Origin: Octopus bimaculoides
Lineage: Eukaryota
Reading direction: 5' to 3'
NCBI RefSeq assembly: GCF_001194135.2
Contig: NC_068991.1
Coordinates: 72,534,021-72,598,020 of the forward strand
Length of the DNA stretch: 64,000 nt
Of the stretch, positions 23,856 through 54,618 are shown piece after piece. The position numbers and the translations under genes are program-made. Numbering within the stretch: position 1 is the first letter of the stretch; the number at the start of each line of letters is the position of its first letter. The notes under the pieces were generated by a model that searched no databases, had not been told where the DNA came from, and saw only the letters and a program-made list of their open reading frames with translations.

Positions 23856-24081
23856 ACCAGATAACTTATATACTCATGTGCACTCACATGCATCTAAACC
23901 CAAATACACATACACTGTGGGATTCCACACAGTTTCCATTGACCAAATTCATTCATAAGGCATTGTTTGATGTAGAGATATATGAATATTTGTGTAATCT
24001 ACATGAAATGGTATCAAGAAGAGACACCATTAAAGGAGAAATAACAATTTCTACATTTATAATGCTTTACCAGTTGGCACA

Positions 24082-26391: not shown

Positions 26392-26515
26392 AATGACAAA
26401 ACGGTCATGGTTTGGTGCTCTAATGGGAACAGAGCGAGAAGAACATCACTTTGTTATTGTACGTGACAAACCCTTGAGTCAAGTGAAAGCAGATTTAGTT
26501 CATGCTTTCCTTTCA
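26392..26515 (+). CDS. BRSK2: BRSK/SAD kinase exon: MTKRSWFG...RDKPLSQVKADLVHAFLS (start of KA1)
   Basis: ttttcag acceptor, gtaagt donor; SWFG and DKPLS..KAD.VHAFLS motifs; phase 2-0. Confidence 0.97.
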
Positions 26516-28619: not shown

Positions 28620-28794
28620 ACTCCAGATATGAGTCATAGTGTTGTCTCAACTACAACGTTCCGAGCAGAATACAGGAGATCCAGCAGTGCTTCCATGTTT
28701 TCCCGTAATGTTCGATTTCAAGTGGATATCTCTCCCTCACCAGGTTATGAGAATAACGGAGAATCCTACTGCTTGACATTTACCCTGATTTCAG
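28620..28794 (+). CDS. BRSK2: BRSK/SAD kinase KA1 exon: TPDMSHSVVSTTTFRAEYRR...VRFQVDIS...YCLTFTLIS
   Basis: tttag acceptor, gtaatc donor; SHSV.S..FRAEY, V.FQVDI and TFTL.SG motifs; phase 0-1. Confidence 0.97.
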
Positions 28795-30757: not shown

Positions 30758-30927
30758 GGCCAACTCGACGCTTTAAGAGAATCTGTGAATACATTCAAGC
30801 TCTATTACTGACTCCACGTGGAGAGAGAGAAATAACTCGAAGAATAAGCACTGACAGTTCTTCATCATATTCATCGGAAATGTCACCTACCCATAATGCC
30901 AGTCCCCGAGATACTACGGAAGATGAG
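30758..30927 (+). CDS. BRSK2: BRSK/SAD kinase exon: GPTRRFKRICEYIQALLL...SPRDTTEDE (end of KA1)
   Basis: gttag acceptor, gtaacg donor; GP.RRFKR..E.IQA.LL motif; phase 1-0. Confidence 0.95.
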
Positions 30928-34440: not shown

Positions 34441-36829
34441 AATATAGTTTAAGATTGTCTCTTTGTTCTTTTAGTTGTTTCAGTCACTGGACCGTGACCA
34501 TGCTGGAGCACTGCCTGGAAGGGTTTAGTCTCTCAAGTCAACCCCAGCACTAGATTGTTTAAAGTTTGGTACTTATTCTCTTGGACTCCTTTGCTGAACT
34601 GCTAAGTTATAGGGATGTAAACAAACCAACACTGGTTGTCAAGCAGTGGGGAAGGGACACATGCTAGGATAGACACACACACACATGACAGGCTTCCACA
34701 CAGTTTCTGTCTATCAAATTCACTCAGAAAGTGTTGGTTAACCCAGGGTGAGTTTGAATCCAAAACCATGTAGCTTTAAAGCAAACCTCTTAACCACATG
34801 GCCACGCCTGCATCAATGTCCAGTTTTTGCTTTAGACGTAGGTTCTTCTTTTGGATTAGTGAAGCAAACAGGTTGTCTTTCATGAATGTTTCATGCTCCA
34901 AGAATTAAAGACAATTCTAAAAGGTGGAAGTATGTAGTGTTGATTTGATAGTGTAGAACTGGATAAAATAATAATGCTAATTCTAGCATAAAAATTACTT
35001 AAGAACACAAAAAAAATGTGACCTAGCATAATAAATCATTTTGGGATGTTTCCAGGTCATTTTTAATGATTGAATTTGATAGGAAAGGCTGCATATAGTT
35101 TGATGTGTTTTCTATGAGATTTCTATCCGTTGTGTTGTAACTTTCGGTATTTCCAAAGTATTTTGGGAAATTTGATTCTTATAAATCAATGTTGTTTTAT
35201 AGTAAATATTTTTGTAAAACTTTCTGTTTGAAATTATAAATATCCATACCACAGATAATCACCTTTAATCCTTACTGCACAAGGACCAGGTATACTAGAT
35301 TCCCTATATAACCCCTTGAAGCATGGGAATCGAGTTTGGTATGTTTTTGATAGTGCGGTGCTTTCCAGCATTCTCCACATTTCATATGATGTTGTATGGA
35401 CATTTTATTTTTACTGTCCAATAGAAAGAGGTTGTGAGAAGTGATTTGCATATGATTAGCATATTACATCACCAGCAAAAATGTAATCAGTGCAGTGAGG
35501 GTTAAATATCATAATAATTAATTTCAATTAACACCTTTAAAGTTAATGCCTCAACTTTGCTGCACTTTTTTTATCTTTCTCTGATTTAATTTAGAGAAAC
35601 CAATTGCAGAATAAAAAATTGTGGGCTTGTCAATTTAAAGAATTATTGAAAAAATGGCAGCTCTAAAATGTAGCGCCTTTACATTCGAAAGCAACTCTTA
35701 TTATGTTATTCAGTGCAACTTTTATAAGGATAAAACATACAATTCCATCTGATATTATTTGTTGAAAAGCCAACAGGAAACATACAATGCTTTTGATTTC
35801 AGTGAAATCAAGTCGTCCTCAAACCATTTCTGCCCTTGGTGCGTACCTGGATTTTAAATTTTTTACCAATCTTTTCCACCCTTCTTGGTCTTGGGCTTTT
35901 TTTCTTGGCCATGAACAGTCCAGTATAGAACTTAATATTGGTGTAGCTCCCACCTAGTGTTTTACTGTGTTTGTGGTAATTCTGTTGGCGTCCATCTCCT
36001 CTTAAGGTAATAAGTGTCTTTACAACCGTCTGAAGAAGCTCTTCTGTCTTTGTCAGGATTTTGTTATTTGATTCTGCCGGGTATCCACACCCACCCTCAT
36101 GGAGAGGCCCAATAGGGGACTGGTTTAGTCAATGACTCCTCGACCACGAGTGGCAGGTGGTACTTTACATTTGAAAATGTAGGAATTGAACAAAGTGTAA
36201 TTTTTATGAATCTGAATCTAACATTACAGTTTTCCATCGTGTATTACTTCGGTCATGCTGCCATTTAGGAGTTCTATAGATATACTGGAACATTTGAAAG
36301 AATTTATGTTTGGATACTTCTCTTTCCAGGATAATATCTATTCTATTAACTTTAGTATTTTGTGTTTAACTAACTTGACAATAACATGTTTATGCTTTAT
36401 AGATTCATTTATTTAACTATATATTCTGTATATTTATATAATAAGTGAGTATCTTGGCTCTTTACCAGAATTAAACATTACTCTCACATGAGAAAACTAA
36501 GTTGAAAAAAAATATATCTAAAAAAATATTGTATAACAGTCTATATTTGTGGATATTAATTGTAACAATAATATTGAAACATTTTTAATATATTATACTT
36601 CTCTGTGAACAATCAAAGATAAATATATATAAAAAAAGAAGATATATTAAGTTTTAAAAGTCCCCTAAAACACGAAGTAGTAGACATTATAAGTTTGGTA
36701 ATTTAAAACTTATAATAAAATGTTCTCTCCTTACATACAGAAAATATAACCAGAGAAAGTCCCCACGAAAAGGATTCATTCTCCGTGTGAACTATTTCTG
36801 TTGATGGAATAATTTGTTTTCTAATTCAG

Positions 36830-36889
36830 ATAATGAAAGTAGCTCGAAGCACTATCATGACTACTCCATCAACTTTACGACCTGGAGAG
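36830..36889 (+). CDS. BRSK2: BRSK C-terminal 60-bp exon, copy A: IMKVARSTIMTTPSTLRPGE
   Basis: ttcag acceptor, gtaagc donor; phase 0-0; 44/60 nt and 13/20 aa identical to copy B. Confidence 0.8.
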
Positions 36890-38258
36890 GTAAGCCAACT
36901 AAGTACTGTGCCTCACAATTACATATAACTCTCAGAATAATACAAAGCTCAGCTTAGCTTATTTTGTGACTTCACTGTAGCAAGTACCAGTAATTGCATA
37001 GGGGAAGCCTTCGGTATTATCATAATTGCATGTAAATATTGAAGCATGATCACATCTTTGTATATTGTGCTAATTTTGAGAGAGTGTCTTTAAGTTCTTA
37101 ATCTTTTTAATAAAATCTGTTTTTTAACATTAAGTGAATAATGTATTCAGGGTAATTTCTAATTAGGTTATTTAAGCAATCAACCGGGAAAAAATAACAA
37201 GGTTTTTTTTTTTTTTCAAATTTAAATATATGTTTAATTATCATAGATTAGTTATGTTGATTCATATCCTTCTTCTTTCAGAACTTTTATGCTAAAATAG
37301 TTTTAAAACAAAATTTTTAAATGCGGGGTTCAGTCTTACATTTACTAATTTGTATAAATAAATAAATATAAATATATATATATATATGTATGTATGTATA
37401 TACATGTGTATATATATATATATATATATATATNNNNNNNNNNNNNNNNNNNNNNNNNNNNNNNNNNNNNNNNNNATGTATGTATGTATATGTATATGTG
37501 TGTGTATATATATTTATATATATATATATATGCACCATCATCATAACGTATTGAAAACACAACTGTTCTAGCTTTAACTTTTTATTTCATTTAAGTTTTT
37601 CATATTTTTGTATGGGGTTTTTTGCAGTTTCTTTGAAACACTTAAGCTTCCAAATCCAAACTTTCACAGTCTCATCTTCAGGACGACACAGTGCTGCAGT
37701 CTCTTTACAAGTAAATAATACTTACATAATTAGTGTAGACATTACTGCCACAGTCTGAATTTTAGACTGTCATATTATACATCATCAAGTACATATTTTT
37801 GTTAGTGATTACAATATACTATCTATATTATTTATCTTAATATTATTCTGTTTCCATCATTAATCCTGTATTTTTTTTTTTTTTGTGAGGAATTCTATAC
37901 AAGGTAGACATATTGTTTACTAATGTTTTCCTATCTCATTTTGTTTTATATCATGAAGCATAATATACTGCACTTACTCCTTGTTGCAAGTGCATAGTGA
38001 ACTGACTAGAGACTATTGTATTTGTATGGCCAATATGACAGCTAGGGTTATGAAGTTCACAACTTTCATATTAGCAATCAAATCAATAAACCCATTGATC
38101 ATTAGTAGCTTCTTGCATTCTTGTTTATTATTGATAATTTTGTCTTTAATTTTAATGTCTTAGTAGTATATAATTAATGTCAGCTTATATTTGGATGTGG
38201 TGCATTTAGTGTTCTGTTTTATGAGGCTTTTCACAATGTGTTCATTTATTCTATTGAT

Positions 38259-38528
38259 ACATTATTTACATTATTTACATTTGATGGATATTTGTCCTCA
38301 TCTTGTTTGTTGTTAACACAACGTTTCAGCTGATATACCCTCCAGCCTTCATCAGGTGTCTTGGGGAAATCTCGAACCTGGGTTCTCATTCCTAAGGTAT
38401 TTTATGATGTTGTTGGGGTTAGTAGCCTGTGCTCTTAATCACTATGCCATATGCCCGTGGGCAATAGCATAGTGGTTAAGAGCGCGGGCTACTAACCGCA
38501 AGATTCCGAGTTCAATTCCAGGCTGTGA

Positions 38529-38569
<41 letters not shown>

Positions 38570-38672
38570 TCGAAAAATACCTTAGGAATGAGAACAACAA
38601 ACAAAATGAGGACAAATATCCATGAAATGTAAATAATGTAAATAATTCTTCATCACTTAAATATAGAACTGT
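38259..38672. mobile_element. tRNA-head/hammerhead-tail element, copy 3 (head-to-head inverted dimer)
   Basis: Inverted partial head 38415-38456 abuts forward head 38459-38531; left arm carries the hammerhead; right arm has the hammerhead region deleted. Confidence 0.85.
38315..38360 (-). ncRNA. Putative minimal type I hammerhead ribozyme
   Basis: Minus strand reads GACAC-CUGAUGA-A-GGCUG-GAGGGUAUAU-CAGCU-GAAA-CGUU-GUGUU: stem I, conserved core, stem II, GAAA, loopless palindromic stem III, GUU triplet. Confidence 0.7.
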
Positions 38673-39240
38673 ATTATTCTATTGCTTGTGTGCATTTGAT
38701 TCGTATGAATAGATTGTAGAGCCTTAATGCTTGTAGTTTCTGATTTATTTATTGCATTGTATTTATGATTGTATTATTTCTACGGCTGGGTCTATTAGTT
38801 TGTCAGAATACCTGCTGCCAATTAGTGTTTGCTTTATTCTGTAGATTCCTTTAGTGCTTCATTTGTCAAGGACAATCTGTTGAGGGATTTCACCTCTGGC
38901 ATTTGTATCTGTGTGGGCATTTACATTTTCATCCAAGTAAAGGTGTTTGGCATCACACAAGTCAACAGGCATGATTTGCACTTTATTTTTCTATATGAGT
39001 AGTTATGTCTAGAAATGGAGTCACTGTATTGCTAGCAGGGCATTTGTTCCTGAAATATAGAAAAGTTCCGTAGCTTTCCCTTTTTGTATTCTTAGAAACC
39101 CTCTTTCTTCATTACTTAATATTTATACCATTTTAAATGAATTTTCATATGGAGTTTCTTTCTTCATCACCTACGAAGAGAAAAGACCCTGTTTGTCAAC
39201 ATTTCAGGACTAGAAACAATAGAAATCATATGAAATAATA

Positions 39241-39808
39241 CAGGGTCCACCAAAATTAACTATACATTTTTATTTCAACATGATAAATGTAACATAGAAG
39301 AAATAAGCTACTACAATACAGAAAGTAACACAGGGTACACTAAAGTTTGTTGCAACATAAAACGTGATGTTTATTAAAGCTCCGTGTGCTCTCCGTGGAG
39401 CTCAATGCACTTTGTTAATCTTTCAGGGACCAAGCGGTATACTCTGGCGCACAGCTCCAATGGCACTTGAGCAATGGCAGCTCGTATTTGTTCCTTAAGT
39501 TCAGCAATGTTGCAGGGCTTTGTTGAGTAGACTTTCTCTTTGAGAACGCCCCACAGGAAAAAGTCGGGTGGGGTCAAATCCGGCAAACGAGACAGCCACT
39601 CAAGCAGTCCTCACCTGCCAATCCATCAACCGGGCAGGTTGGCATCCAGCCAGTCTCGCACAAGCGTAGCATAATGGGCCGGTGCCCCATCCTGCTGAAA
39701 GTACAGACCTTCTGCTCCATCCTGCTATTGTAATAACAGCAAAAGCAGCTTCTGTAGAACCATTTCAAAACTGCAATCTTTTGCTCTTTTGTTAATCGGG
39801 TGGACATA
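39241..39808 (-). mobile_element. Internally deleted Tc1/mariner transposon, DD41D type
   Basis: YFQQDGAPAHY...PG*WIGR*GLLEW..R.PDLTPPDFFLWG has 41 residues between the 2nd and 3rd D; TA-CAGGGTCCACC terminus and a weak TIR remnant near 39791-39808. Confidence 0.85.
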
Positions 39809-40862
39809 ATCGATATAACAGTATATCTGAAATAGGGGGGGGGGGAGAAATAAAAATATAACATTTCAGCTTTCAAATGACATATTAAATAGAAAAATTG
39901 AATAAGTATCGACAAAGTTACAAGCAAAAGAAAATATATAGTTACTTATGGTGGACTCTGTATTTACAAACATCCAATAATAAATCCACTTGGCATATCA
40001 GCGGATTATTAATGAAGAAATGGTTCATGTTCCATACAACAGAAATACTCTTTCACTGTTCACATGGGTTCTTTCTTATGGCTCACATTTGCATCCTTAT
40101 ATGTGGTCAGAGTAGTAGCAAACTGATGCCAAGATACAAACAAGCAGAATATTCCAAGAGTGTGGGCAATAAATTTGTTTAATGGAGAAACTGGAAAACA
40201 TTAAAGAAATCAAAAGAAAACATAGAAAATAATTCCATATGAGATTTTAGTATCCAGGAGAGTTAAATTAAAACTTCTAGTAATACAGTGACCATATTTC
40301 TAGATATAAAGCATTCAGAAAGAAAATAACAAATAAATACACCACATCTCTTTTCACTAAAGAGACAATGGAAACATGCGTAATGTTTAACACAGATACT
40401 GAATGATGTCAGTGGTGGAACTGTTACTTTGGAGGGCATTTAAATTCTCTTCGACTAGTGAAGCTCTCTGCATAAGGAAATCTACAGGAAATAACAACGG
40501 CAAACACTAACCAACAGCTAATATCCAAACAAACTAATAGAACGAATCACAGAAGTGTGAATATAATGCAATAAATACATCTGTTAACTTACACAAACTA
40601 TCATAAAGTGTGTTATATGAATCAAATGCATGGTAACTATGAAATGGGTGAGCACATTATCAAAACCTTTATAAGCAAGGCACAAAATACATTACATCAA
40701 GCCATAAAACTATCATTAATGACATGCTACAAAAATAATAAAATGGAAAACCTTATCAATAAAAATTCCAATGGATGTAAGACTGCAGACAAGCCATTAA
40801 TTATCAACAGGGTTTATTACAAAATTGATTGCTAACATGGAAGTTGTGAACTTCATGACTCT

Positions 40863-41033
40863 AAGTAGTTGTATGCTGTCAACTTAATGTGACAGTCCCA
40901 TGAAGGTAATAATAATGACACAGGAAATGCGTCAAGGCCGACAGGAAGTGGTGCAGCTTCCTAAGTCTAAACAACAGTAGTATTATTCCCTTCATGGGAC
41001 TGTCAACATTAAGTTGACAGCATACAACTACTT
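40863..41033. repeat. Inverted repeat, ~45-bp arms
   Basis: 40863-40906 is the reverse complement of 40989-41033 (one indel). Confidence 0.85.
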
Positions 41034-41377
41034 CAACGTATCGCTACTGCATAAATCTCTATGAGAGATTTAGAAATGTATTATTTCTAATTCATGACTC
41101 TAATTGTTATATTGGCCATGTAAGTATAAAACTCTACTGTTGGTCCATCATGTATTTTCTGTGAGTAGCAATTGCAATGCATTATATTCCACCAAAAATA
41201 AAAAAGCTAGATGGGAAAACATTAGCAGATAAGACATCAATCCTATACAGAATTTGTTTGCCATGAAAGCAAACTAATGATGAAAGAAATGCAAATACCA
41301 AACAATGATGGTAAAATAAGATAACGTATACTAATCACAAACAAAAACAATACCCAGTTTATGATGTTTAATTTTAA

Positions 41378-41573
41378 CCCTTTAGCATTTAAACTGACCA
41401 TATCTGGCTAAAATGTTCTACTTGTTTAATGCTCAAACAAACCAAATCTGGTCTCTTACACCTATCCTACAATGTCACCGAAATCTCAAAGCTACATGAT
41501 AATGCATGATTAATTCGAGAGGATGTTAATATATAAGCTTAACATTTAACAGAATAATCTGAATGCTAAAAGG
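41378..41573. mobile_element. piggyBac-type MITE (second family)
   Basis: TTAA at 41374 and 41574; homologous to 31860-32079. Confidence 0.75.
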
Positions 41574-41854
41574 TTAAAGACCAAAACTTCAAATTCTGGC
41601 ACTAATGTCTGCATCAATCATATAGGTGCTGTTTTTTATAAACAGACAGCAACACACACCAACATTCCTTCATCCTGAAGATGAAATCTCGAAGGTTTAG
41701 AAACGTCTGCTAACAAATTGCAAAAAATTAATATGAAAATATGAGGGAAAAGACTTGGATAAAAACGCAAAGTAGAACTCAGTCATGTTTCCAATACAAT
41801 ATGTCTAAAAGAGAAACTGTTCCAGCATATGTATGTGTATATATATATATATAT

Positions 41855-42178
41855 CATCATCATCGTTTAACGTCCGCTTTCCATGCTAGCATGGGTTGGA
41901 CGATTTGACTGAGGACTGGTGAAACCGGATGGCAACACCAGGCTCCAATCTAATTTGGCAGAGTTTCTACAGCTGGATGCCCTTCCTAACGCCAACCACT
42001 CAGTGTAGTGGGTGCTTTTACGTGTCACCCGCACGAAGGCCAGTCAGGCGGTACTGGCAACAGCCACGCTCAAAATGGTGCATCTTATGTGCCACCTGCA
42101 CAAGAGCTAGTCCAGGGGCACTGGCAACGATCTCACTTGGCTTGCCGGGTCTTCTCACGCACAGCACATTTCCAAAGG
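41855..42178 (-). mobile_element. RTE-tailed SINE-like repeat, family C
   Basis: Matches other family C copies. Confidence 0.8.
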
Positions 42179-42371
42179 TATTTGTATTTATAATTATAAT
42201 TATATATAAACATTTTATTTATAACAAAAGGGCTTAATATATGATGCAGAGTTGAATATTTATTATTCAACTACTGACAGTCACTTCAGAGTTTTGCTAA
42301 GGGTGGCTTGTCAAAGTATTTGATAGACCACCCCCTGTGAAAAACAGCATAGTAATTATCAACCTTTTGGT

Positions 42372-42408
<37 letters not shown>

Positions 42409-42609
42409 AGATGGAAGAGAGAAAAAAAACTACTGAATAAATAGAGTTCATTAATTTATTTTGAATCGATGACTTGTGTCAATGTTAGGCCAAGTTTCTC
42501 ACTTCTAAGCATTTGTTCAGGCAACAAACGGACTGTGTTTCACAGAGATAGGGAACTGGGAGTAGCTACAGTGTGATTTTATCAACCGCAAGTGAATGCA
42601 AATATACCA

Positions 42610-42611
42610 TG

Positions 42612-42654
<43 letters not shown>

Positions 42655-42755
42655 TATCATCCTTGTGATCATTGTCATTGTCAGCATCACCATCATCATT
42701 GTCATCATGACCACCACCACCACCACCACCACCACCACCACCACCACCATCATCA
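42610..42755. repeat. (CAT)n/(CAC)n trinucleotide tract
   Basis: Direct reading; source of the poly-H, poly-D and poly-M ORFs. Confidence 0.95.
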
Positions 42756-43591
42756 TTTCCCATCTATTCCTCATGCTGGATGGGTTACCAGGATCCAAGT
42801 CNNNNNNNNNNNNNNNNNNNNNNNNNNNNNNNNNNNNNNNNNGAGTTACTACCCCCTCACATTGGAGACCCTGTCTTGCTCATATATCCATATTTGGAAG
42901 GGTTTCTACAGCTGGATGCCCTTCATAAAGCCAACCACTTTACAGGGTGTGCTGTTGGCATTTTTCTTGTGGCACGAACAGTAGGGAAGTTGCTTTGTGT
43001 CTGGCAAGATTGAAGAATTCTCTCTCCTCTACTTTCTCTTTATTTCATTCAAGTAATGTGGCTGATGAGAGAGGAAACAGATGAAGAGCAAGAAGATAGA
43101 AGAGAGATTTTGATGGAGAAGAGGAGAGTGATAGGGGTGAATGGAGGAAGGAGTAATAGAAGTGAGACAGTGATAGGAAACTACATGTCGCTTGTGGATA
43201 AGGAAATTGAATAGAAACACAGTTTGAGTGTTGCGCAGAATGTGAGAGAGTGATCAAAGGTTGATATGAGGGTGAGAGAGAGAGAGAGATTAATATGAAA
43301 GAATAAGAGACAGAGAGAGAGAGAATGAAAGGAGGGGAGTGATGTATGTCAACAATGAATGATGGATGTGTATGTGAAACAGTGATTGGTAGATAATATT
43401 AAAAATGAGAGAGAGAGAGAGAGAGTGATAAAGATAAGTAATGGTAGGAGGTGATTAAATAAGGACTGATACAATGCTATCCCTCATTAGACAGGCAGCA
43501 TGATGGGAGAGAGGCAGAGTGATAAAGGGTAATGGTAGCAGGACTGAAATAAGACAGACCCAAATTCCAAACTTCATTGCCCCCCCCCCCC

Positions 43592-44030
43592 CATTTTAAC
43601 ATCCATTTTGTCATGCATGCATGGGTGGGTTGTGACTGACCACAATCATTTACCATGACCATTGTGAGGTTCAGTTTCTCATCATCAGTAATCACTACTT
43701 CTTCCTATGTCTACCTAGGTCTTTATCTACCACATGTTCAACACATTTCAAGGTTCACTAAGCACTTCTTTACACAACCGACATCTTTCATATGCATCAC
43801 GTGCGCAGACCATTGCAGTCTCTTATTTCCTGCACACACTGCATTTGGTTCCTCCTACATCCGACTTTTCAGTCTCTCATTTCATTCGTGCCATTGTTCC
43901 TTCCCACCAACATTACACACCCGGTGCCGCATGCTTGCTTCACTTCTCTCCAGCCTTCACCAGCCTTTCACATTTAAGGCCGACACCTTGCAACTGTACA
44001 GCATTGCACTTTGTACACAAGCGTCGTAAC
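43592..44030 (-). mobile_element. Degraded RTE-clade LINE 3' end
   Basis: Minus-strand translation has SAMLYS...RLQWSAHVMHM..CVKKC...RPR.T.EEVV; its 3' tail resembles the family C tail. Confidence 0.65.
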
Positions 44031-44261
44031 CATCTGCTCTCCATTACAAGTATGTGCATGTACATGCACTCAAATACATATATTCATATTGTCTGAATGT
44101 GCACACACACACATACGTATATATGTTAATACATAGCAAAGTACTTGTTAAATTATCTATGTTCTCTACATGCACACTTACACATAGACACTCTCTGTCT
44201 GTCTCCCTCTCTCCCTCTCTCTCTCTTTCTCATTGCCTCTGTCTGTCTGTCTCTCTCGCTC

Positions 44262-44262
<1 letters not shown>

Positions 44263-44297
<35 letters not shown>

Positions 44298-44369
44298 CCT
44301 ACCTGCATATCTATCTACCTATCTACCTACCTACCTACCTACCTACCTACCTATCTATCTATCTATCTA

Positions 44370-44419
<50 letters not shown>

Positions 44420-44420
44420 C
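44263..44420. repeat. (TATC)n/(TACC)n/(TGTC)n tetranucleotide tract
   Basis: Direct reading. Confidence 0.95.
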
Positions 44421-44520
44421 ATCTCTCTTAAATACACACTTTCTCAGTTACAGTCTTTGTTTAAAGCATTTTAATTCACAGATAATTCAATATATTGGTT
44501 CACATATCAAAATTTTATGA

Positions 44521-44567
<47 letters not shown>

Positions 44568-45023
44568 GATAATTTTTATTTTACTTTAAGCAGTAACTCC
44601 CTAAGCTTTTATACCCCATTCTTTCATGGGCTACTATCCTTCTTTTGAAACAGCCCCCTCCACTGCTAATCAGGTTACCTTGGTAACAAAAGCTATTAAG
44701 CCTTCCAGGAATTTGAAAGAATCTATTTCCCTAAGGCTCATACTGATGATTGCTCTGGTGCATCTACCACATATGATGTTTACCTTTATTGTCAGCTTGC
44801 CTGTGACCCCACAACACCTGTTGTGTAGCCATCATTTACACTGAGTACACAGGTTGACATTCACATATATGCACACCTACTCTAAATTTCATAAATAGTC
44901 CCACTCAAATAAGTCTATGGCAGAGGTTATCTACATCAACTAATATAATTTCAGTAGAGATCTAGTATGCATGTACATTTGTGTGTATATGTATGTATGT
45001 ATATACATATACATATGTTTATA

Positions 45024-45070
<47 letters not shown>

Positions 45071-45320
45071 NNNNNNNNNNNNNNNNNNNNNNNNNNNNNN
45101 NNNNNNNNNNNNNNNNNNNNNNNNNNNNNNNNNNNNNNNNNNNNNNNNNNNNNNNNNNNNNNNNNNNNNNNNNNNNNNNNNNNNNNNNNNNNNNNNNNNN
45201 NNNNNNNNNNNNNNNNNNNNNNNNNNNNNNNNNNNNNNNNNNNNNNNNNNNNNNNNNNNNNNNNNNNNNNNNNNNNNNNNNNNNNNNNNNNNNNNNNNNN
45301 NNNNNNNNNNNNNNNNNNNN

Positions 45321-45677
45321 GACCCCTAGGGGTGGATGTTACTGTTGCTTTAGCCCCAGGAGGACATCTCCTCCAGCTGGCTTATCGACACACTACTGTG
45401 TCCTGTTTGTTTTGCCAAGGGAAGTTATCCCTCTCATCGTGATCGTAGCACGAATGGACCCGGGTTTCAGGGTTATTTCCCTTCGTCAGCGTCCGATAGC
45501 TACCGACCTTCGATAGCTACCATAACCCTGAAACCCGGGTCCGTTCGTGCTACGATCACGATGAGAGGGATAACTTCCGTTGGCAAAACAAACAGGACAC
45601 AGTAGTGTGTCGATAAGCCAGCTGGAGGAGATGTCCTCCTGGGACTAAAGCAACAGTAACATCCACCCCTAGGGGTC
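45321..45677. mobile_element. Foldback element, 156-bp arms (3 mismatches), 45-bp spacer; left end lost in a gap
   Basis: 45321-45476 is the reverse complement of 45522-45677; the spacer has CGATAGCTACC twice. Confidence 0.9.
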
Positions 45678-46383
45678 AGCCACACTTAAGTGGCAATACA
45701 CTTCACTATATATATATATATATACATATATATATTATCCATATTTTACTATGGCTGGGTAGCCAGTGTATTTTGACTGGAATCTAACAAGAGAAATCTA
45801 GTTTCATAGTTAGTCCAGAGTTGCCTCTCTTTCCAGTTTTCAATGTTGATGAAGGCTCCCCAAACTCACTTGATGTGTTTACAACTTTTTGACTACAACT
45901 AGAATATTTCTCTAATCCAAAATGCAGTGAATGACCTTCTTAAGTGTTCAAATGTGTTTCAAGCTTATTTGAACTGATTACAAGTTCAGTTATATAATGT
46001 TTATTTTTATGTGAAATTATCTTTAAAAATAATTTATCATTAAACTGAAGGACTACTTAATACAAAGAGCATATTTATTAATTTTTATGATGGGAAGGTT
46101 GACAGTAACTTCAATATTTCGACTCATCACCTTTCATCACCAACCTGTTTATGTGTAAATGTTTTAAATATTTTTGTTTTAAAGCCAAAACAATGCAACT
46201 TATAAAAATTAATAATAATACAAGTCAATGGTTAGTACTATTTATTAACTAGTATTTCAATGTTTCAAAGCTGAAATATCATGTAATAGTACTAACCATT
46301 GACCTGTATTAATGCTATTTATAACTTGCACTATGTGTGGTTTAAAAAAATATTCAAAACATTTATATATATATATATACACA

Positions 46384-46465
<82 letters not shown>

Positions 46466-46466
46466 C

Positions 46467-46511
<45 letters not shown>

Positions 46512-46512
46512 C

Positions 46513-46555
<43 letters not shown>

Positions 46556-47691
46556 CACACATACATATATATATATATTGATAGTGATGTTGAAGTTTTG
46601 GTCAGCTAAACCATAATTAGACTGTAATGCATTAAGTTAATCTTGTATTTATATAGTACCTGGGGAGATAAAATTTTTCTGAGATTTGCTCAGTTGAATG
46701 GTAATTAAGTTGTAGAGTAGAAGTTGTGATGGAGAGATGTTGTGGAGAAATTTTTTATTGATTAAAGTTGGGGTTATGTTATTGTTCAGAATTTATTCAT
46801 GCATGTACAACTTTGTAAACAGGTGTGTATATTTAGGGCTGTTAGCTTCAGGTCATAAGATTGCTTTTTAGCGGTTCACAAAAAGGAAGTAGGTATGGTA
46901 GGGGAAGATTTTAGGTCTGAAGATATGCCTTATTTTTAGTTATTATTGGTCTTATCAGATTTCATTCTTTGCTTTGGCAATGTAAAAGAATATATATTGT
47001 TCACACAACATGTGGACATTAAGCCACATGTGCAATACAAGCACTGCCTGCTTAGTTCAGATGTCACTTGGTTTAAACCACTTCCTTGTCCTTGAGTGCC
47101 TCTATTGGAGTCCGTTCTCTTGTAGGCATTTATGCCAGGTGTCCTGTGAGAGGATAACTTTCTCCTTTCCTCTTACCATTCTTGGAGTCCTTGAAAACAG
47201 CCATGAGTACTATTTGTCCTCTTGTGACTCATTGAAAAACGTTTATGCAAAGTCTAGTTTGTTTTAATTAAACTGGGTTGACATATTTTTCATATGTGGA
47301 AGGCAGAATGATCAAGTTGATCGTTGCTGAGATTTGAATACAGATTGTAAAGGGACATAATTCAAGTCATAATAGGTTTAGCATGGCAGTTAATTATGTC
47401 CAACATGTTGCTACCCCTATGTTGACCAGATTTTAGAAAAAAAATCAGAGTGAAGTGGCAGCCTTTACCATTAACACTGGAAAGTTTTGAAAACTACTTT
47501 CCCTGTTTATTCTTTCCTAAAATATTTTATTGTATTTTGATTTATTTAATGCTTTCACCAAGGAACCTCTTTCAAATTGGTGAAATTTTCCTTGGTATTT
47601 AGTTGGAATCTAATGTGTACCAGTGGCTATTTCCTTCAAACTAGGAAATATTTATGCATTCAAATAAACATAACAGATATGTGTATGCGTG

Positions 47692-47726
<35 letters not shown>

Positions 47727-47841
47727 ATTCTATTATTCATAAGATACATTGATGAGATGAGGCAGATTTTAGGCTCATAGTTATTTTGAGTGATCTAATG
47801 TGTATGTGGATAAATGTATATCATCTATCTATCTATCTATC

Positions 47842-47882
<41 letters not shown>

Positions 47883-48418
47883 GTATGTATGTATGTATGT
47901 ATGTATGTATGTATGTATGCATGTGTGTGCGTATATATGTATGTATATATGTGAGTGTGTGTGTTATTATAGAGCAAATTGTTTTCAGCTGTGTATATTT
48001 TCCGCATACAATCACGCACTCACACGTGCACATGCACAAACACACATTCACTTTCACACACACACACACTCATGCATATGCACATTCTATGTTTAAAGCA
48101 TATTAATTTGCAGATAGTTGAATACATTGATTCGCATTTTGTAATTTTATATTACTTTTTTACTGCAAATTTTTTATTTATTTTTAAGATTTTCCATTTT
48201 CTCATTTGGTTTTGAAACATACACACATTTCTTCCACCATGCAAATATATTTTGTCTGCTTAGAAAGTCAAATAAATAAGTTTGTATAACTTTAGTAAAT
48301 TTCAATCTTGATATTAAACAGCAACAAAAAGACAGCATTAATTATAAGAAAATAGATTAAATTGGAAAATCTTAAATATTTAACATTTTGCATTCATTTG
48401 AGCAAAATTGAGAAAAAC

Positions 48419-48659
48419 AGTAAAGTTTATTTGCCAACAGAATGTGGTGGTCCTTTAAAGGAAGATGTCACTCTTGTTTAAGCTCCAGGAAAACATCTTT
48501 TCCAGTTGGTTATTGACACAGTATCTGTGTTCCTATAGTGTTTGCAAGGGAGGTCATCGCTCCCATCTCCAGCTGGAAAAGATGTTTTCCTGGGACTTAA
48601 ACAAGAGCAGCAACATCCTTTAGAGGACTGCCACATTCTGTTGGCAAATAAACTTTACT
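48419..48659. mobile_element. Foldback element, diverged relative of 45321-45677
   Basis: Terminal AGTAAAGTTTATTTGCCAACAGAATGTGG inverted at both ends; arm sequence aligns by eye to the 45.3-kb element. Confidence 0.8.
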
Positions 48660-48934
48660 ATTCGCTACTATTACTGTATATCTATCGATGAGAGATTTAA
48701 AACAAGTTGTTTTTCTCTATTGAGAAAAGCAGTTTGCCACATGTCTGTGTGTTCATGAAACTAGAGTTTATTCAGATTTTCAAAGTATTTATGTTGACAG
48801 TTGAAAAGTCTAACCCTAATCCTAACCCTAATCCTAACCGTAACTGGATGCTTGTCTGTTGCAGACTTAAGCCACAGATGTGACTGGTATTTATTTTCCA
48901 GTGAAACAACAGTCATGTAGCTCAGGAAATGAAG

Positions 48935-49196
48935 TGCCTTGTTCAAGAACTCAGTTCACTGCTCAGTTTGATAATCAAGCCTTGCTCAATGTGTCGTGTA
49001 CTGTTTGGTCTGAGAAATGATCCTCGCACAAAGACTCAGTACATTAATCAGTCTGAGAGCCAAGCCTTGCATAAGGACCCAGTGAATTGCTCACTCCAAG
49101 AATTGAGCCTTGGTCAAGGATTCAGTGCAGTGCTCAGTTTGAGGGTTGAGCTTTGGTCAACGAACCAATGCACTACTCAGTCTGAGAATTGAAACC
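48935..49196. repeat. Degenerate 43-bp tandem repeat, ~6 units, inside a CORE-like SINE
   Basis: Unit starts at 48953, 48996, 49038, 49081, 49124 and 49167. Confidence 0.75.
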
Positions 49197-50418
49197 CATG
49201 AGTTAATGATCATGAGCTCAACAATGCAACCATTAGGCTATGTACTTTATACCTTCACTGAGCCAATAATAGAGATTGAAATTAATTTTATGTTGGTGGA
49301 AACTTGATTCTTGAGGAATAATAATACAACCTGATGGTAACTCCTCATAATCATTTAACATCCACTTTTCCATGCTTGCATGGGTCAGATGGAATTTGTG
49401 GAGGCAGATCTTCCATTGATGGATGCTCTTATCATCAACCCTCACCTGTTTCCCAGTAAGGTTACATTTCCCCATTACCAAACATATTTTTCACAGAAGA
49501 CTTGTATGTTGGTGATGCTCGTTTACAACCATCATGTGATGTCAAGGTTATTATTGTCATTATTGTATCATGACAAAACAAAAAAAGCACCAAAGCCATA
49601 TTCACCTTCCCGAATCCTTTCTATTTGTGTGTTTTCTCTTTGAAAAAGACCACAATTGCATAGAATATAGAATTAATAATATTCACACTTAATATCAAGT
49701 TGTGAAAGCATTTCTAAGAACACAATTCCATTCTATAGAAATACTTACTCAATACTTTTCTCCTGGATATTTAAATACAACTTTTAGTCTCTGCACCTGT
49801 ATCAATAAGATGTATGTATTTGATAATATATTTCTCTTACGAATAATGCATATTTTGTACATCAGTGAGCAGCTGTGTGGTTTCATAATGTTTAAAAACC
49901 CTTAGTTATGTAATTTGTTATTGCTTATAATTTACCACCATGGATTAAACTAATTTTGTAATTTGATTTTTATTTATTTTGTACACATTATCAGGAAATA
50001 GCATTCTCTCTTTATTGAAGCTAACATTTTCAAAGAGAAACATTTACACTATGTATCCCTCTGTGAAATAAATTATCACCTCGATAAATAGACTTAATCC
50101 CATGATTAATATTGATGAATATTAATCTTAATAGTCATTAATTAAAACCTATTGAAATTTAGTAAAACATCACTGAGTTATATTTCCAAATAGTTTGAGT
50201 TAAAAACCTGCTCAGTTTATACTCAGACATTTTAAAAGAATAGTAATATTTAGAGTGAAGCTTTTTATTATTTTCATTGCTGGCTACTCATACACACACA
50301 CACACACACACACATAATATGTGTGTACATGTGTGTATATATATATATATATATATATGATATAATGTATGTATGCATGGGTGTATACGTACGTGTGAGT
50401 GTGGGTGTATATATATAG

Positions 50419-50450
<32 letters not shown>

Positions 50451-50533
50451 ATGTATAAATAGGTATGTATGTGTATATGTATGTATGTGTGTATATATAT
50501 GTATGTATGTGTATATATATATGTATACATATA

Positions 50534-50565
<32 letters not shown>

Positions 50566-50993
50566 CATATANNNNNNNNNNNNNNNNNNNNNNNNNNNNN
50601 NNNNNNNNNNNNNNNNNNNNNNNNNNNNNNNNNNNNNNNNNNNNNNNNNNNNNNNNNNNNNNNNNNNNNNNNNNNNNNNNNNNNNNNNNNNNNNNNNNNN
50701 NNNNNNNNNNNNNNNNNNNNNNNNNNNNNNNNNNNNNNNNNNNNNNNNNNNNNNNNNNNNNNNNNNNNNNNNNNNNNNNNNTTCATTTTCTGCCTTTATT
50801 ACTTTATTCTGAGAGAGATGTGTTTGAGAAGCTTCTTTTTGCACGATAGTTGTGGCCCAGTCACCTCTCCTGGTTCTAGACCCAAGGACAGTGCCTTAGG
50901 AAGGAATACCTGAGATTGCATCTGTTTTTGATTTTCTTCCTTTTTTTTTTTTGTACAAACTATGTTGATGGCATTATTTGTTTTCTAATCCAG

Positions 50994-51053
50994 ATGATGA
51001 AAGAAGCTAGAAGTTCGATCATGAGTGGCTCATCGACTTTAAAGCCAGGAGAG
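50994..51053 (+). CDS. BRSK2: BRSK C-terminal 60-bp exon, copy B: MMKEARSSIMSGSSTLKPGE
   Basis: tccag acceptor, gtaaga donor; phase 0-0; paralogue of 36830-36889. Confidence 0.8.
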
Positions 51054-52795
51054 GTAAGACAACCATGCATCGACTGCAGTGCACTGAGCTAATTTAAATC
51101 AGTGTATTGCTGCCTTTGCTGTAGTCACCTCAGATGTTGTCTTGGAGGCTATTTTTGTTTATAATTGACTTTATCTTTCACTTTACTCCCAAATTTTTTT
51201 AATTCCACGCATGAATTTTGGACATAGAGTGGAAGTTCAATTATAAACAACTGTTTTTCTCCCAAGACCCCTAATAGAATGTAGAATTTATTAGAACCAC
51301 TTTCCCTTGAAACAGGTACTTCTGTTATTCCTTGAATGATGATGAAAAAAAAAAAAAGAAATCAATAAGATGGTGGTATAAAGGCGTGTGTAGTTGGTAC
51401 AAAATATCTTTGCCTTTATTTGGAAGCTGCTGAGTAAAACCAATTGAAAATATTTAGTGATGTTTAATTGATATTTATTAACATCACTTGAATAATGTTT
51501 GGAAGAGTACTACACATATCGTTGTTTGGAATGGGAAATGAAACAATATACAGATTTAAAATACATAAACCATTTTTTTTTCATTAGAAAATGAATAACT
51601 AAATATATTAATAAATAAACCAAATTTTAAAAGCACTCAAAAACAGAAAATTATCCTCATCTTAATGATGTGTTTTGATTTCGTATAATGTTGAGATTTT
51701 TAAAGATTATCTTCAAAATGGTTTTGAGATGAAAATGTCCTATATTTTTAAAAAATTAAAGATTTTTAGTGTTTCCATGACTATTTCTTATTTTAAATTT
51801 CATTCTATCTACACAAAAATATAAGTGTAATTCAAAACACCCATCAGTAAAATATTCTAAGTATATACTCTCGTCTTTTCCTCACACATGAACCCTATTA
51901 AGGTGTTAAAATATATTTTTGGCTGAAATATACCTTTATGTATTTTTAAAGGGCTCTAAAATTTTTATAATTTCTTTAAACTTTTGAACTGTTCATTTCA
52001 GTGGACTTTCAGACGTTTCTTCCAGGTTCAATCAAACCTGGGTTGTGTACCCAATTCAAAAATGTCCTTTTTATTTTAATGCTAACTTTTTTAGATCCAA
52101 TTTATAATTATTCATCTGCTATGCCCCTTTCTTCGTATGCTGTGGCATTAGCATCTACAAAGAAACTGAAGCATGCAGGCAACAATTTCAGAATCCCTTT
52201 GTTGCACAGCTGCCCACAGAATCTTATAGTCCAACGATCAAATTGGTTGTAGAATTACTTCTGGTAATCCCATCCTAATCTTTTAAAACATGCCAGAAAT
52301 AAATATAGATAGATAGGTGCAGGCATGACTATGTGGTTAGAAGTTTTCTTCCCAACCACATGGGTTCAGTCCTGCTATGTGGCATCTTGGGCAAGTATCT
52401 TCTACTAAAGCATCAGACTGACCAATGCCTTCTAAATGGGTTTGGTAAATGGAAACTGAAAGAAACATGTCGTATATGTGTGTGTGTGTGTATGTCTTTG
52501 TGTCCGTGTTTATACCCCACCACTGCTTGGCAACCAGTGTTGGTGTGTTTACATCCCTGTAACTTAGCAGTTTTCCAAAAGAGACCAATAGACTAAATGC
52601 CAGGCTTAAAATAACCAATACTGGAGTTGATTAGTTCAACCAAAATTCCTCAAGGTGGTGCCCCAGCATGGCCGCAGTCTAATGACTGAAACAAGTTAAA
52701 GATAGAGTAAAAGATGCTGAACTGTTGGATACAAATATGTCCATCAATGTAAGCCCTCTTTTTTAGTTTCCATATTTATATTGTTATTAGTTGTA

Positions 52796-53198
52796 GGCGT
52801 AGGAGTGGCTGTGTGGTAAGTAGCTTGCTTACCAACCACATAGTTCCGGGTTCAGTCCCACTGCGTGGCACCTTGGGCAAGTGTCTTCTACTATAGCCTC
52901 GGGCCGACCAAAGCCTTGTGAATGGATTTGGTAGACGGAAACTGAAAGAAGCCCGTCACATATATATATATGTGCGTGTGTGTGTGTCTGTGTTTGTCCC
53001 CCCCCCACACACACACACACTTGACAACCGATGCTGGTGTGTTTACGTCCCCGTAACTTAGCGGTTTGGCAAAAGAGACCGATAGAATAAGTACTAGGCT
53101 TACAAAGAATAAACCCTGGGGGTCGATTTGCTCGACTAAACGCGGTGCTCCAGCATGGCCACAGTCAAATGACTGAAACAAGTAAAAGAGCAAAAGAG
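52796..53198 (+). mobile_element. tRNA-derived SINE, family A (full length)
   Basis: High similarity to 15183-15580; an older copy lies at ~52318-52712. Confidence 0.85.
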
Positions 53199-53933: not shown

Positions 53934-53995
<62 letters not shown>

Positions 53996-54591: not shown

Positions 54592-54618
54592 ATGAAACGA
54601 GAAAATGTTGAGCTGTGA
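54592..54618 (+). CDS. BRSK2: Probable BRSK terminal coding exon: MKRENVEL*
   Basis: tttttacattcag acceptor; phase 0 matches the 60-bp exons; TGA at 54616-54618; no homology check possible. Confidence 0.6.
   Translation: MKRENVEL

What the first reader, a model, noticed from the sequence alone, without database searches (positions are those of the whole stretch)
36830..51053. Tandemly duplicated 60-bp coding exon in the BRSK tail: candidate mutually exclusive pair
Seen: exons A (36830-36889) and B (50994-51053) lie 14 kb apart. Both are 60 bp, phase 0-0 and have canonical splice sites; they share 44/60 nt and 13/20 aa. Differences include four synonymous changes and conservative I/M, T/S and R/K swaps, which indicates that both remain under coding constraint. 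The divergent middle (TIMTTP versus SIMSGS) changes the Ser/Thr content. Established: equal-length paralogous exons are the usual origin of mutually exclusive splicing. Inference: a lineage-specific isoform switch downstream of the KA1 domain in a neuronal polarity kinase.
Basis: partly seen in the sequence, partly recalled or inferred. Interest (0 to 1): 0.8.

Follow-up and report, generated by a model that had tools for sequence, protein, structure and literature searches.

The report
Duplicated 60-bp exon in BRSK tail
A neuronal kinase gene (BRSK/SAD) of a cephalopod-like genome carries two related 60-base coding exons after its KA1 domain; one is strictly conserved in a distant relative and looks like a regulated neuronal exon, but nothing in the DNA shows that the two are used one-or-the-other.

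Summary
Exons A (36830-36889) and B (50994-51053) are both 60 nt, phase 0-0 and AG/GT-bounded. They share 44/60 nt and 13/20 aa, within a 101-bp duplicated block (blastn E 1e-21) that has no third copy in the window. The gene is BRSK (Pfam KA1_BRSK, E 2e-19).

- **Exon A is real.** In a deeply diverged species (Logan contig L001; KA1-exon dS 1.45) it is 20/20 aa identical. All 9 nt changes are synonymous. Its intron flanks are conserved, including a UGCAUG...GCAUG pair downstream, as expected of a regulated neuronal exon.
- **Exon B rests on indirect evidence.** It has an open frame and no indels. Its branch-point/polypyrimidine/3' splice-site block (28/31) and donor (9/10) are better kept than the synonymous sites (dS about 1). 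No orthologue or transcript of B could be retrieved.
- **Mutual exclusivity is untested and not hard-wired.** Both exons are 3n long, the intron between them is about 14 kb, both introns are GT-AG, and no convincing competing RNA structure was found.
- **Other caveats.** B lies on a 3.2-kb contig bounded by gaps.

I judge this an ordinary tandem exon duplication giving probable alternative exons. Interest is modest.

The parts
28620..28794 (+). BRSK KA1-domain exon (TPDMSHSVV...TFTLIS-G), ends in phase 1
   Evidence: tblastn with mollusc BRSK tails. Pfam KA1_BRSK E 2.3e-19. Orthologue L007 has dN 0.023 and dS 1.45, and similarity stops at the exon edges.
30758..30927 (+). Exon that closes the KA1 domain and encodes the Ser-rich linker (G)PTRRFKRICEYIQ...SPRDTTEDE; donor GAG|GTAACG, ends in phase 0
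   Evidence: Aligns to Sinanodonta, Elysia and other BRSK tails.
36799..36829 (+). Conserved 3' splice-site block of exon A: candidate branch point UUGAU (A at 36804), polypyrimidine tract UUUGUUUUCU, CAG
   Evidence: 28/31 identical to the block before B and 23/31 to L001. Upstream of it no similarity remains.
36830..36889 (+). Exon A, 60 nt, phase 0-0, IMKVARSTIMTTPSTLRPGE
   Evidence: Orthologue in L001-L005 (P0001, P0094): 20/20 aa, 9 nt changes all synonymous.
36890..36942 (+). Conserved intron element directly after exon A: donor GTAAGC, CAACTAAGTA, TTACATATAACTCTCAGAATAATA
   Evidence: 51/60 matches to L001, against 37/60 for the intron after the KA1 exon. A 4-nt indel shows it is non-coding. 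The 24-mer is unique in the window.
36959..36970 (+). Conserved intron island TTATTTTGTGAC (12/12 identical in L001)
37027..37048 (+). TGCATG N11 GCATG: pair of Rbfox-type (U)GCAUG motifs at +138 and +155 after exon A
   Evidence: The same pair with the same 11-nt spacing lies at +165/+182 in L001, inside otherwise poorly alignable intron.
50963..50993 (+). 3' splice-site block of exon B, paralogous to 36799-36829 (branch-point candidate A at 50968)
50994..51053 (+). Exon B, 60 nt, phase 0-0, MMKEARSSIMSGSSTLKPGE; donor GAG|GTAAGA
   Evidence: Against A: NG86 dN 0.21, dS 0.96. No orthologue or transcript was retrievable.
51209..51213 (+). Single GCATG at +156 after exon B, the same offset as the second motif after A (suggestive only)
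52716..52749 (+). Best candidate partner for base-pairing with the upstream 31-mers of A (-23.9 kcal/mol) and B (-21.8); marginal
   Evidence: 2 of 60 shuffles of A's 31-mer do as well. B's own best site is elsewhere (33908; 9 of 60).
54592..54618 (+).
   Evidence: AG-preceded short ORF. No similarity to the A/B block or to other BRSK C-termini. The NGRR...DK[VM]* tail of other invertebrates is absent from 30.9-64 kb.

Best explanation
**What it is.** A and B are two paralogous coding exons of the BRSK (SAD kinase) gene, made by an old tandem exon duplication. They lie between the exon that ends the KA1 domain and Ser-rich linker and the still undefined 3' end of the gene.

**What they encode.** Each encodes a 20-residue module, [I/M]MK[V/E]ARS[T/S]IM-xxx-STL[R/K]PGE, in what is most likely a disordered tail. 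A carries T-T-P, a proline-directed phospho-acceptor. B carries S-G-S.

**How I think they are used.** Each exon is 3n long and phase 0-0, so either, both or neither can be spliced in without changing the frame. I therefore read them as regulated alternative (cassette-type) exons. I think their use is set by trans-acting splicing factors bound to conserved intron elements, not by a hard-wired either/or device. Those elements are:
- the shared branch-point/polypyrimidine/3' splice-site block;
- the conserved elements after A;
- the (U)GCAUG motifs, which in other animals are Rbfox sites that promote inclusion when they lie downstream of an exon.

**Shown:** the duplication, the BRSK identity, coding constraint on A, conserved flanks and (U)GCAUG motifs of A, and intact signals of B.

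**Inferred:** that B is spliced, that the exons are alternative, that Rbfox-type factors act here, and that the module tunes phosphorylation or partner binding of the kinase tail.
For: - **Duplication.** 101-bp block, E 1e-21, exactly two copies.
- **BRSK identity.** KA1_BRSK E 2e-19 and hits named BRSK2.
- **Exon A is coding.** 9 of 9 substitutions against L001 are synonymous (dN 0, dS 1.06). The KA1 exon of the same sample gives dS 1.45, so neutral sites are saturated.
- **Exon A looks regulated.** Its flanks are conserved (42/60 upstream, 51/60 downstream), whereas similarity around the constitutive KA1 exon stops at the splice sites. There is also a 12/12 island and a TGCATG-N11-GCATG pair with identical spacing in both species.
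- **Meaning of (U)GCAUG.** It is the conserved metazoan Fox-1/Rbfox element of tissue-specific exons (PMC2777236).
- **Exon B.** No stop and no indel over 101 nt. The 3' splice-site block is 28/31 and the donor 9/10 identical to A, although synonymous sites have diverged to dS about 1. Homology ends exactly where the splice signals end (-31, which includes a UUGAU branch-point candidate, and +10).
- **Precedent in the same gene family.** C. elegans sad-1 has a cassette exon near the 3' end that changes the C-terminus. It is set neuron by neuron by RNA-binding proteins at conserved flanking intron elements (PMC6641836).
- **Base rate.** In C. elegans, 8 putative exclusive clusters turned out to be tandem cassette pairs, all 3n apart from those carrying natural termination codons. 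Only 5 true exclusive clusters were 3n with an excisable intervening intron (PMC4165533).
Against: - No transcript evidence of any kind could be reached.
- No orthologue of B was found, so B's use rests on a paralogue comparison of 101 nt.
- A substitution-only test cannot reject a younger duplication with a neutrally drifting B: flank 4/41 against non-synonymous about 9/46 differences.
- In the upstream block A and B are closer to each other (3 differences) than A is to its orthologue (8). This fits a younger duplication or concerted evolution and conflicts with the dS estimate.
- B lies on a contig placed only by scaffolding.
- Homologous, equal-length, same-phase neighbouring exons are more often exclusive than not in Drosophila annotation (PMC3228551).
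- The 3' partner exon is unknown.
Confidence: 0.42

Rival explanations
1. Strict mutually exclusive pair. Every mRNA carries A or B, never both or neither, giving two tail isoforms that differ only in the 20-residue module.
For: - All sequence-level criteria for exclusive-exon candidates are met: equal length, same phase and splice-site type, homology, neighbouring position (criteria in PMC3228551).
- Both copies keep near-identical 3' splice-site blocks. These could act as competing selector sequences.
- One site, 52716-52749, can pair with both blocks.
- A and B are more alike in that block than A is to its orthologue. Co-evolution with a shared partner would produce this.
Against: - No enforcing mechanism is visible. 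The exons are 3n, so there is no frame/NMD penalty.
- The intron between them is about 14 kb, so there is no steric block.
- Both introns are GT-AG.
- The docking candidate is marginal: 2 of 60 shuffles equal it for A, and for B it is only the third-best site. Its conservation cannot be checked.
- The module lies in a probably disordered tail, so the usual structural reason for exclusivity is missing.
- A GCAUG lies downstream of both exons, which would favour inclusion of both in the same cells.
- The C. elegans base rate for 3n pairs with long introns is about 5 exclusive to 8 tandem cassette (PMC4165533).
Confidence: 0.3
2. B is an unused, slowly decaying duplicate (pseudo-exon). Only A is ever spliced.
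For: - No orthologue, ORF or transcript of B was found in any collection.
- All 7 amino-acid differences can be placed on B's branch, because A is unchanged in a distant species.
- Codon-position counts of the A/B differences (5/4/7) show no third-position excess.
- With only 60 nt, a neutral B after a moderately recent duplication cannot be rejected from substitutions alone.
Against: - AG, GT, the polypyrimidine tract, the branch-point candidate and the donor +1 to +10 are all intact and better conserved than synonymous sites.
- There is no indel or stop in 101 nt, although dS(A,B) of about 1 equals the between-species dS.
- Homology ends exactly at the limits of the splice signals, as expected from selection rather than from a 101-bp duplication unit.
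- The failure to find an orthologue is uninformative. The collections hold only called ORFs, and B's ORF is short.
Confidence: 0.12
3. Both exons are constitutive. The duplication simply made a tandem 2 x 20-residue repeat in the tail.
For: Both exons are 3n and in phase, and both have strong, similar splice sites. A repeat in a disordered tail would be tolerated.
Against: Exon A has long conserved intron flanks and conserved (U)GCAUG motifs. The constitutive KA1 exon of the same gene, compared between the same two species, has none. Such flanks are typical of regulated alternative exons.
Confidence: 0.08
4. Assembly artefact. The 3.2-kb contig carrying B (50782-53995) is misplaced. It may belong to another locus or paralogue, or to a collapsed or duplicated region.
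For: The B contig is bounded by gaps on both sides and holds no other BRSK exon. Continuity across the gaps could not be verified.
Against: - B is on the gene's strand and sits between plausible neighbours.
- It is not a haplotype copy of A: 73% exon identity and no flank similarity beyond 101 bp.
- Gaps start at (TA)n repeats, as is typical of within-scaffold gaps.
- Only one KA1_BRSK exon was recovered from the related species' sample, which gives no hint of a second BRSK gene.
Confidence: 0.05

Closest known systems
C. elegans sad-1 exon 15 (alternative cassette exon of the SAD/BRSK orthologue; PMC6641836)
   Same: - Same gene family and the same region: a penultimate part of the gene, after the kinase, UBA and KA1 parts.
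- Alternative splicing changes the C-terminal tail.
- It is controlled by neuronal RNA-binding proteins at conserved intron elements on both sides of the exon.
   Different: - The worm exon is single, not duplicated.
[quoted passage not shown]
- The worm regulators are MBL-1, MEC-8 and MSI-1. Here the conserved motifs are (U)GCAUG.
- There is no sequence similarity between the exons.
Mutually exclusive exon clusters born by tandem exon duplication (tropomyosin, Mhc, 14-3-3 zeta, Dscam and others; PMC3228551, PMC9013439, PMC6071210)
   Same: Equal length, the same phase and splice-site type, sequence homology, neighbouring position, and asymmetric divergence of the copies.
   Different: - Exclusivity is not shown here.
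- No short intron, U12 site, frame penalty or convincing docking/selector pairing was found.
- The exons encode a probably disordered tail rather than a fixed piece of a folded domain.
Tandem cassette exon pairs of 3n length (for example lev-11 exons 9a/9b, and 8 clusters re-classified in PMC4165533)
   Same: Two adjacent 3n exons whose single, double and zero inclusion all stay in frame, separated by a long excisable intron.
   Different: I did not check how many of the re-classified worm pairs are homologous to each other. Here the two exons are clear paralogues.
Rbfox/Fox-1-dependent neuronal exons with conserved downstream (U)GCAUG (PMC2777236)
   Same: UGCAUG plus GCAUG within 160 nt downstream of exon A, conserved in position and spacing between deeply diverged species, in a neuronal gene.
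   Different: Binding and dependence are untested. Other conserved elements after A have no assigned factor.

Membership tests
Mutually exclusive exon cluster | Exons of about the same length | tested here: met
   60 nt and 60 nt
Mutually exclusive exon cluster | Same splice-site type and same reading-frame phase | tested here: met
   Both are CAG|AT...GAG|GTAAG and phase 0-0. The upstream exon ends in phase 0.
Mutually exclusive exon cluster | Sequence similarity between the exons | tested here: met
   44/60 nt and 13/20 aa. The 101-bp block has E 1.3e-21.
Mutually exclusive exon cluster | Neighbouring internal exons with further exons on both sides | tested here: inconclusive
   The upstream exon is secure. 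The downstream exon at 54592 is unsupported. No other exon candidate was recognised between A and B, but 543 nt there are unread.
Mutually exclusive exon cluster | [quoted passage not shown] | not testable with these tools
   No cephalopod transcript or annotated isoform could be retrieved.
Mutually exclusive exon cluster | A device that forbids double inclusion or double skipping: intron too short, U2/U12 incompatibility, or frame shift with NMD | tested here: not met
   The intervening intron is about 14.1 kb, both introns are GT-AG, and both exons are 3n.
Mutually exclusive exon cluster | Competing RNA structures (one docking site, one selector per exon) | tested here: inconclusive
   The best common partner, 52716-52749, pairs at -23.9 (A) and -21.8 (B) kcal/mol. 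2 of 60 and 9 of 60 shuffled selectors reach the observed optimum. No second species was available to test conservation.
BRSK/SAD kinase gene | KA1_BRSK domain and the conserved pre-KA1 segments | tested here: met
   PF21122 E 2.3e-19. Exons align to BRSK2-named proteins of molluscs, arthropods and vertebrates.
BRSK/SAD kinase gene | N-terminal kinase and UBA domains | not tested
   Only the C-terminal half of the gene was mapped in the window; the earliest exon match is at 3104.
Rbfox-regulated alternative exon | (U)GCAUG in the flanking intron, conserved between species | tested here: met
   TGCATG at 37027 and GCATG at 37044. The same pair with the same spacing is in L001.
Rbfox-regulated alternative exon | Exon inclusion depends on an Rbfox protein | not testable with these tools
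   Needs a knock-down or a minigene experiment.

The most novel reading that the evidence does not exclude
A cephalopod-restricted, neuron-type-specific either/or switch in the SAD/BRSK kinase tail. Conserved (U)GCAUG and other intron elements would select module A, which has a proline-directed T-T-P phospho-site, or module B, which has S-G-S. The kinase would then be regulated or localised differently in different neurons, without any of the known hard-wired exclusivity devices.
Probability: 0.25. Interest if true: 0.5.

Novelty: new member of a known kind. Interest (0 to 1): 0.3.

Why it matters
SAD/BRSK kinases control neuronal polarity and synapse maturation. Their C-terminal tails are where worm isoforms and the two vertebrate paralogues differ (PMC6641836).

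A lineage-restricted pair of tail modules with conserved neuronal splicing signals would be a further, independent way of diversifying that tail. It would also be a simple test case for how 3n duplicated exons are coordinated when no structural device enforces a choice.

As it stands, this is a well-documented candidate of a common kind, not a discovery.

Tried and rejected
1. **Protein searches for transcripts or orthologues of the tail.**
   - The first search gave only P0001, a genomic ORF over exon A in another species.
   - A profile of the A, B and P0001 ORFs found no candidates in the word-indexed search. In the exhaustive representative search it found only P0001 plus two irrelevant repeat proteins.
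2. **Exact look-ups of the window's own ORFs over B.** Not on record.
3. **Degenerate exon pattern scanned against JGI metagenome contigs.** Zero hits.
4. **A third, diverged copy.**
   - The terminal segment at 54592 shows no significant similarity to the A or B block (141 and 171 of 500 shuffles score as high).
   - No other copy was found in the window.
5. **An ancestral-type terminal exon between A and B.** The 'ISNGRR' hit at 43410 lies in a (GA)n tract that ends in a stop. I rejected it as low complexity. No NGRR-type exon exists in 30.9-64 kb.
6. **Homology of A/B to the tails of bivalve, gastropod, spider and other invertebrate BRSK.** Not significant (p 0.27-0.95). No A/B-like exon lies in the 4.8-kb last intron of Sinanodonta.
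7. **Local RNA structure.**
   - Fold z-scores are -1.4 for B and -1.1 for A, which is not significant.
   - The two-species consensus fold is weak.
   - The strong 'self-duplex' after B is only a palindrome.
8. **Rfam and tRNA scans of the window.** Nothing.
10. **Identifying the species behind the Logan runs through the literature.** No hits.
11. **Checking continuity across gaps using repeats that span them.** Uninformative.

Full report
**1. The observation**

Exon A (36830-36889) and exon B (50994-51053) are each 60 nt. They translate to IMKVARSTIMTTPSTLRPGE and MMKEARSSIMSGSSTLKPGE and share 44/60 nt and 13/20 aa. Both follow TTTTCTAAT[T/C]CAG and precede GTAAG.

A local alignment shows that the duplicated block is 101 bp, 36799-36899 against 50963-51063. 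It is ungapped and 80% identical, with blastn E 1.3e-21 inside the window. The 31 nt before the exons are 28/31 identical and the 10 nt after them 9/10. Beyond these limits there is no similarity. tblastn, blastn and a 20-nt pattern with three mismatches find exactly two copies.

**2. Assembly gaps**

No gap touches an exon or its splice signals. The nearest gap is 545 nt after A and the next nearest 212 nt before B, so the reading frames do not depend on the gaps. Most gaps begin at (TA)n microsatellites.

Exon A lies on the same uninterrupted contig (28588-37433) as the two KA1-coding exons. Exon B is alone on a 3.2-kb contig (50782-53995) with gaps on both sides. Order, orientation and the 14-kb distance are therefore scaffold statements only. 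I found no repeat spanning a gap that could confirm continuity. B is not a haplotype copy of A: the exons are 73% identical and the flanks unrelated.

**3. The gene**

Several segments on the + strand align to BRSK proteins of molluscs, arthropods and vertebrates, many named BRSK2 by their sources:
- about 3104 and about 8229;
- 18928-19137;
- about 25937;
- 26393-26515;
- 28620-28794;
- 30758-30927.

The joined C-terminal part hits Pfam KA1_BRSK at E 2.3e-19. Exon 30758-30927 closes the KA1 domain, runs through a Ser-rich linker and ends in phase 0 at ...TTEDE|GTAACG. That phase fits the phase-0 start of both A and B.

**4. Exon A is a real, strongly constrained exon with the marks of regulation**

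A tail query retrieved one ORF, P0001, with a near-identical variant P0094. It comes from Logan assemblies of five sequencing runs (L001-L005). It covers an orthologous exon A.

- **Coding constraint.** The exon is 20/20 aa identical. It has nine nucleotide changes, all synonymous (dN 0, dS 1.06).
- **Divergence of the two species.** The KA1 exon from the same sample (L007) gives dN 0.023 and dS 1.45. Its similarity stops within 4-5 nt of the splice sites. The two species are thus so far apart that neutral sequence is saturated.
- **Conserved flanks.** Against that background the introns around exon A are conserved: 42/60 matches upstream, concentrated in the last 31-34 nt, and 51/60 downstream. 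The intron after the KA1 exon scores 37/60. A 4-nt indel in the downstream element shows that it is non-coding.
- **Conserved islands further out.** There is a 12/12 island (36959-36970). There is also a TGCATG-N11-GCATG pair (37027-37048) that recurs with the same spacing in L001.

(U)GCAUG is the conserved binding element of Fox-1/Rbfox splicing regulators of tissue-specific exons (PMC2777236). Conserved flanks and conserved (U)GCAUG are what one expects of a regulated, probably neuronal, alternative exon. This is an inference; no transcript was seen.

**5. Exon B**

I could not retrieve any orthologue or transcript of B. This is not evidence of absence. The collections hold called ORFs, and B's ORF is short. 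The case for B is internal.

- There is no stop and no indel over 101 nt.
- AG, GT, the polypyrimidine tract, a UUGAU branch-point candidate at -26 and the donor up to +10 are all kept.
- These flanks differ from A at 4 of 41 positions. The exon has dS 0.96 and dN 0.21 (omega 0.22).
- Homology ends exactly where the splice signals end. Selection on an old duplicate would produce this. A 101-bp duplication unit that later acquired 14 kb of insert at its junction would be a much less likely route.

There are weak points.
- With 60 nt, a substitution-only test cannot reject a younger duplication with a drifting B.
- Codon-position counts of the differences (5/4/7) show no third-position excess.
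- In the upstream block A and B differ at 3 positions, while A and its orthologue differ at 8. This suggests a younger duplication or concerted or co-evolution, and disagrees with the dS estimate. I leave this unexplained.

I put the probability that B is a used exon at about 0.75-0.8.

**6. Is the pair mutually exclusive?**

The sequence-level criteria for exclusive-exon candidates are met: length, phase and splice type, homology, adjacency (PMC3228551). The defining criterion, one and only one exon per transcript, cannot be tested here.

The known hard-wired devices are absent:
- both exons are 3n, so double inclusion and double skipping stay in frame and escape NMD;
- the intervening intron is about 14 kb;
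- both introns are GT-AG.

I scanned 28.6-57.6 kb for partners of the two conserved 31-mers, and ran the shuffle control on the introns 30.9-54.6 kb. The best partner of A's copy is 52716-52749 (-23.9 kcal/mol), which also pairs with B's copy (-21.8). However, 2 of 60 dinucleotide shuffles of A's 31-mer do as well. B's own optimum lies elsewhere and is matched by 9 of 60 shuffles. That is a lead, not evidence.

Experimental base rates from C. elegans are sobering. Eight putative exclusive clusters proved to be tandem cassette pairs, all 3n apart from those carrying natural termination codons. Only five of the verified exclusive clusters were 3n with an excisable intervening intron (PMC4165533). 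In Drosophila annotation, on the other hand, homologous same-phase neighbours are mostly exclusive (PMC3228551).

The module lies in a Ser/Thr/Pro-rich tail after the folded KA1 domain, so the usual structural reason for exclusivity is weak. B also has a GCATG at +156, the same offset as A's second motif. If that site is functional, it would favour co-inclusion. My estimates are:

| Reading | Probability |
|---|---|
| Regulated cassette-type use without strict exclusivity | about 0.4 |
| Strict exclusivity | about 0.3 |
| B unused | about 0.12 |
| Both constitutive | about 0.08 |
| Mis-scaffolding | about 0.05 |

**7. Lineage and the 3' end**

The bivalve Sinanodonta BRSK locus (L006) goes from the KA1-tail exon (...EEDISFQ|GTAAGG, also phase 0) across a 4.8-kb intron to one terminal exon, VFEKERV...NGRR...KRKDKM*. 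No A/B-like exon lies in between. Tails of a gastropod, a spider and other invertebrates show no significant similarity to A or B. So the module is not detectable outside the group that holds the window species and the L001 species.

Several invertebrate tails share a VF[EQ]...NGR[RK]...[DT][KR][VLM]* pattern. Nothing like it exists in 30.9-64 kb of the window. The one apparent hit, at 43410, is a (GA)n tract.

It is not related to the A/B block. The true 3' exon may be outside the window or in a gap. This does not affect the phase logic for A and B, but the junctions '36889>54592' and '51053>54592' should not be taken as given.

**8. Comparison with what is known**

The closest functional precedent is C. 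elegans sad-1 exon 15. It is a cassette exon near the 3' end that changes the C-terminus. It is set neuron by neuron by RNA-binding proteins at conserved flanking intron elements. The same paper notes that vertebrate SAD-A and SAD-B differ mainly in their C-terminal sequence (PMC6641836).

Structurally the pair is a textbook tandem exon duplication (PMC9013439, PMC6071210). What would be new is only the gene and lineage, plus possibly a trans-factor-only way of coordinating two 3n paralogous exons.

**9. Verdict**

The duplication and the coding nature of A are solid. B is probably a used exon. Alternative use is likely for A. Exclusivity is open, and the DNA does not enforce it. I rate this a new member of a known kind, interest about 0.3.

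Noticed in passing
window 37027-37048; L001 989-1010: TGCATG-N11-GCATG downstream of exon A is conserved in position and spacing between two species whose neutral sites are saturated. This is a likely Rbfox-type splicing enhancer. A 12/12 island, TTATTTTGTGAC, lies at 36959-36970.
   Followed up: partly
The VF[EQ]...NGRR...DK[VM]* C-terminal pattern shared by bivalve, arthropod and other invertebrate BRSK tails is absent from the read sequence downstream of 30.9 kb. The true last exon may lie outside the window or in a gap.
   Followed up: partly
window 36799-36807 with 36875-36883; 50963-50971 with about 51038-51047: In both copies the first 9 nt of the conserved upstream block (GUUGAUGG) can pair with exon codons 13-15 (CCAUCAAC in A, UCAUCGAC in B). 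This would loop out the 3' splice site. The synonymous TCA>TCG change in B turns U-A into U-G. The helix is weaker in L001, and the fold z-scores are not significant.
   Followed up: partly
window 36799-36829 against 50963-50993 against L001 734-764: The paralogous upstream blocks of A and B differ at 3 of 31 positions, but A and its orthologue differ at 8 of 31. Yet dS(A,B) is about equal to dS(A,orthologue). Concerted evolution, co-evolution with a shared partner, or a younger duplication are all possible; this is unresolved.
   Followed up: no
window 19138-19200: After the exon ending ...RFHRRKLQ the frame stays open as GIPYHNGL.... This resembles the residues GIPHPYCNGF that are annotated as coding in the bivalve protein P0002 and appear in many mollusc ORFs. 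It may be an exon extension or an alternative donor.
   Followed up: no
window 45321-45677: A 357-nt stretch directly right of gap 45071-45320 is its own reverse complement (92% over 362 aligned columns). It is a large inverted repeat or an assembly artefact.
   Followed up: no
window 17147-17640 (+), 39374-39586 (-), 24067-24423 (-): These ORF remnants resemble Tc1/mariner transposase (QQDSAPCHTA, DCNPLDYY) and a retroelement tail. The resemblance is judged from memory only; Pfam gave no hit at E <= 0.01. Many copies of a short interspersed repeat (translating as ...SKLLTTQPLLR) and (TA)n/(CA)n microsatellites fill the introns. ARAGORN and Rfam found nothing.
   Followed up: partly
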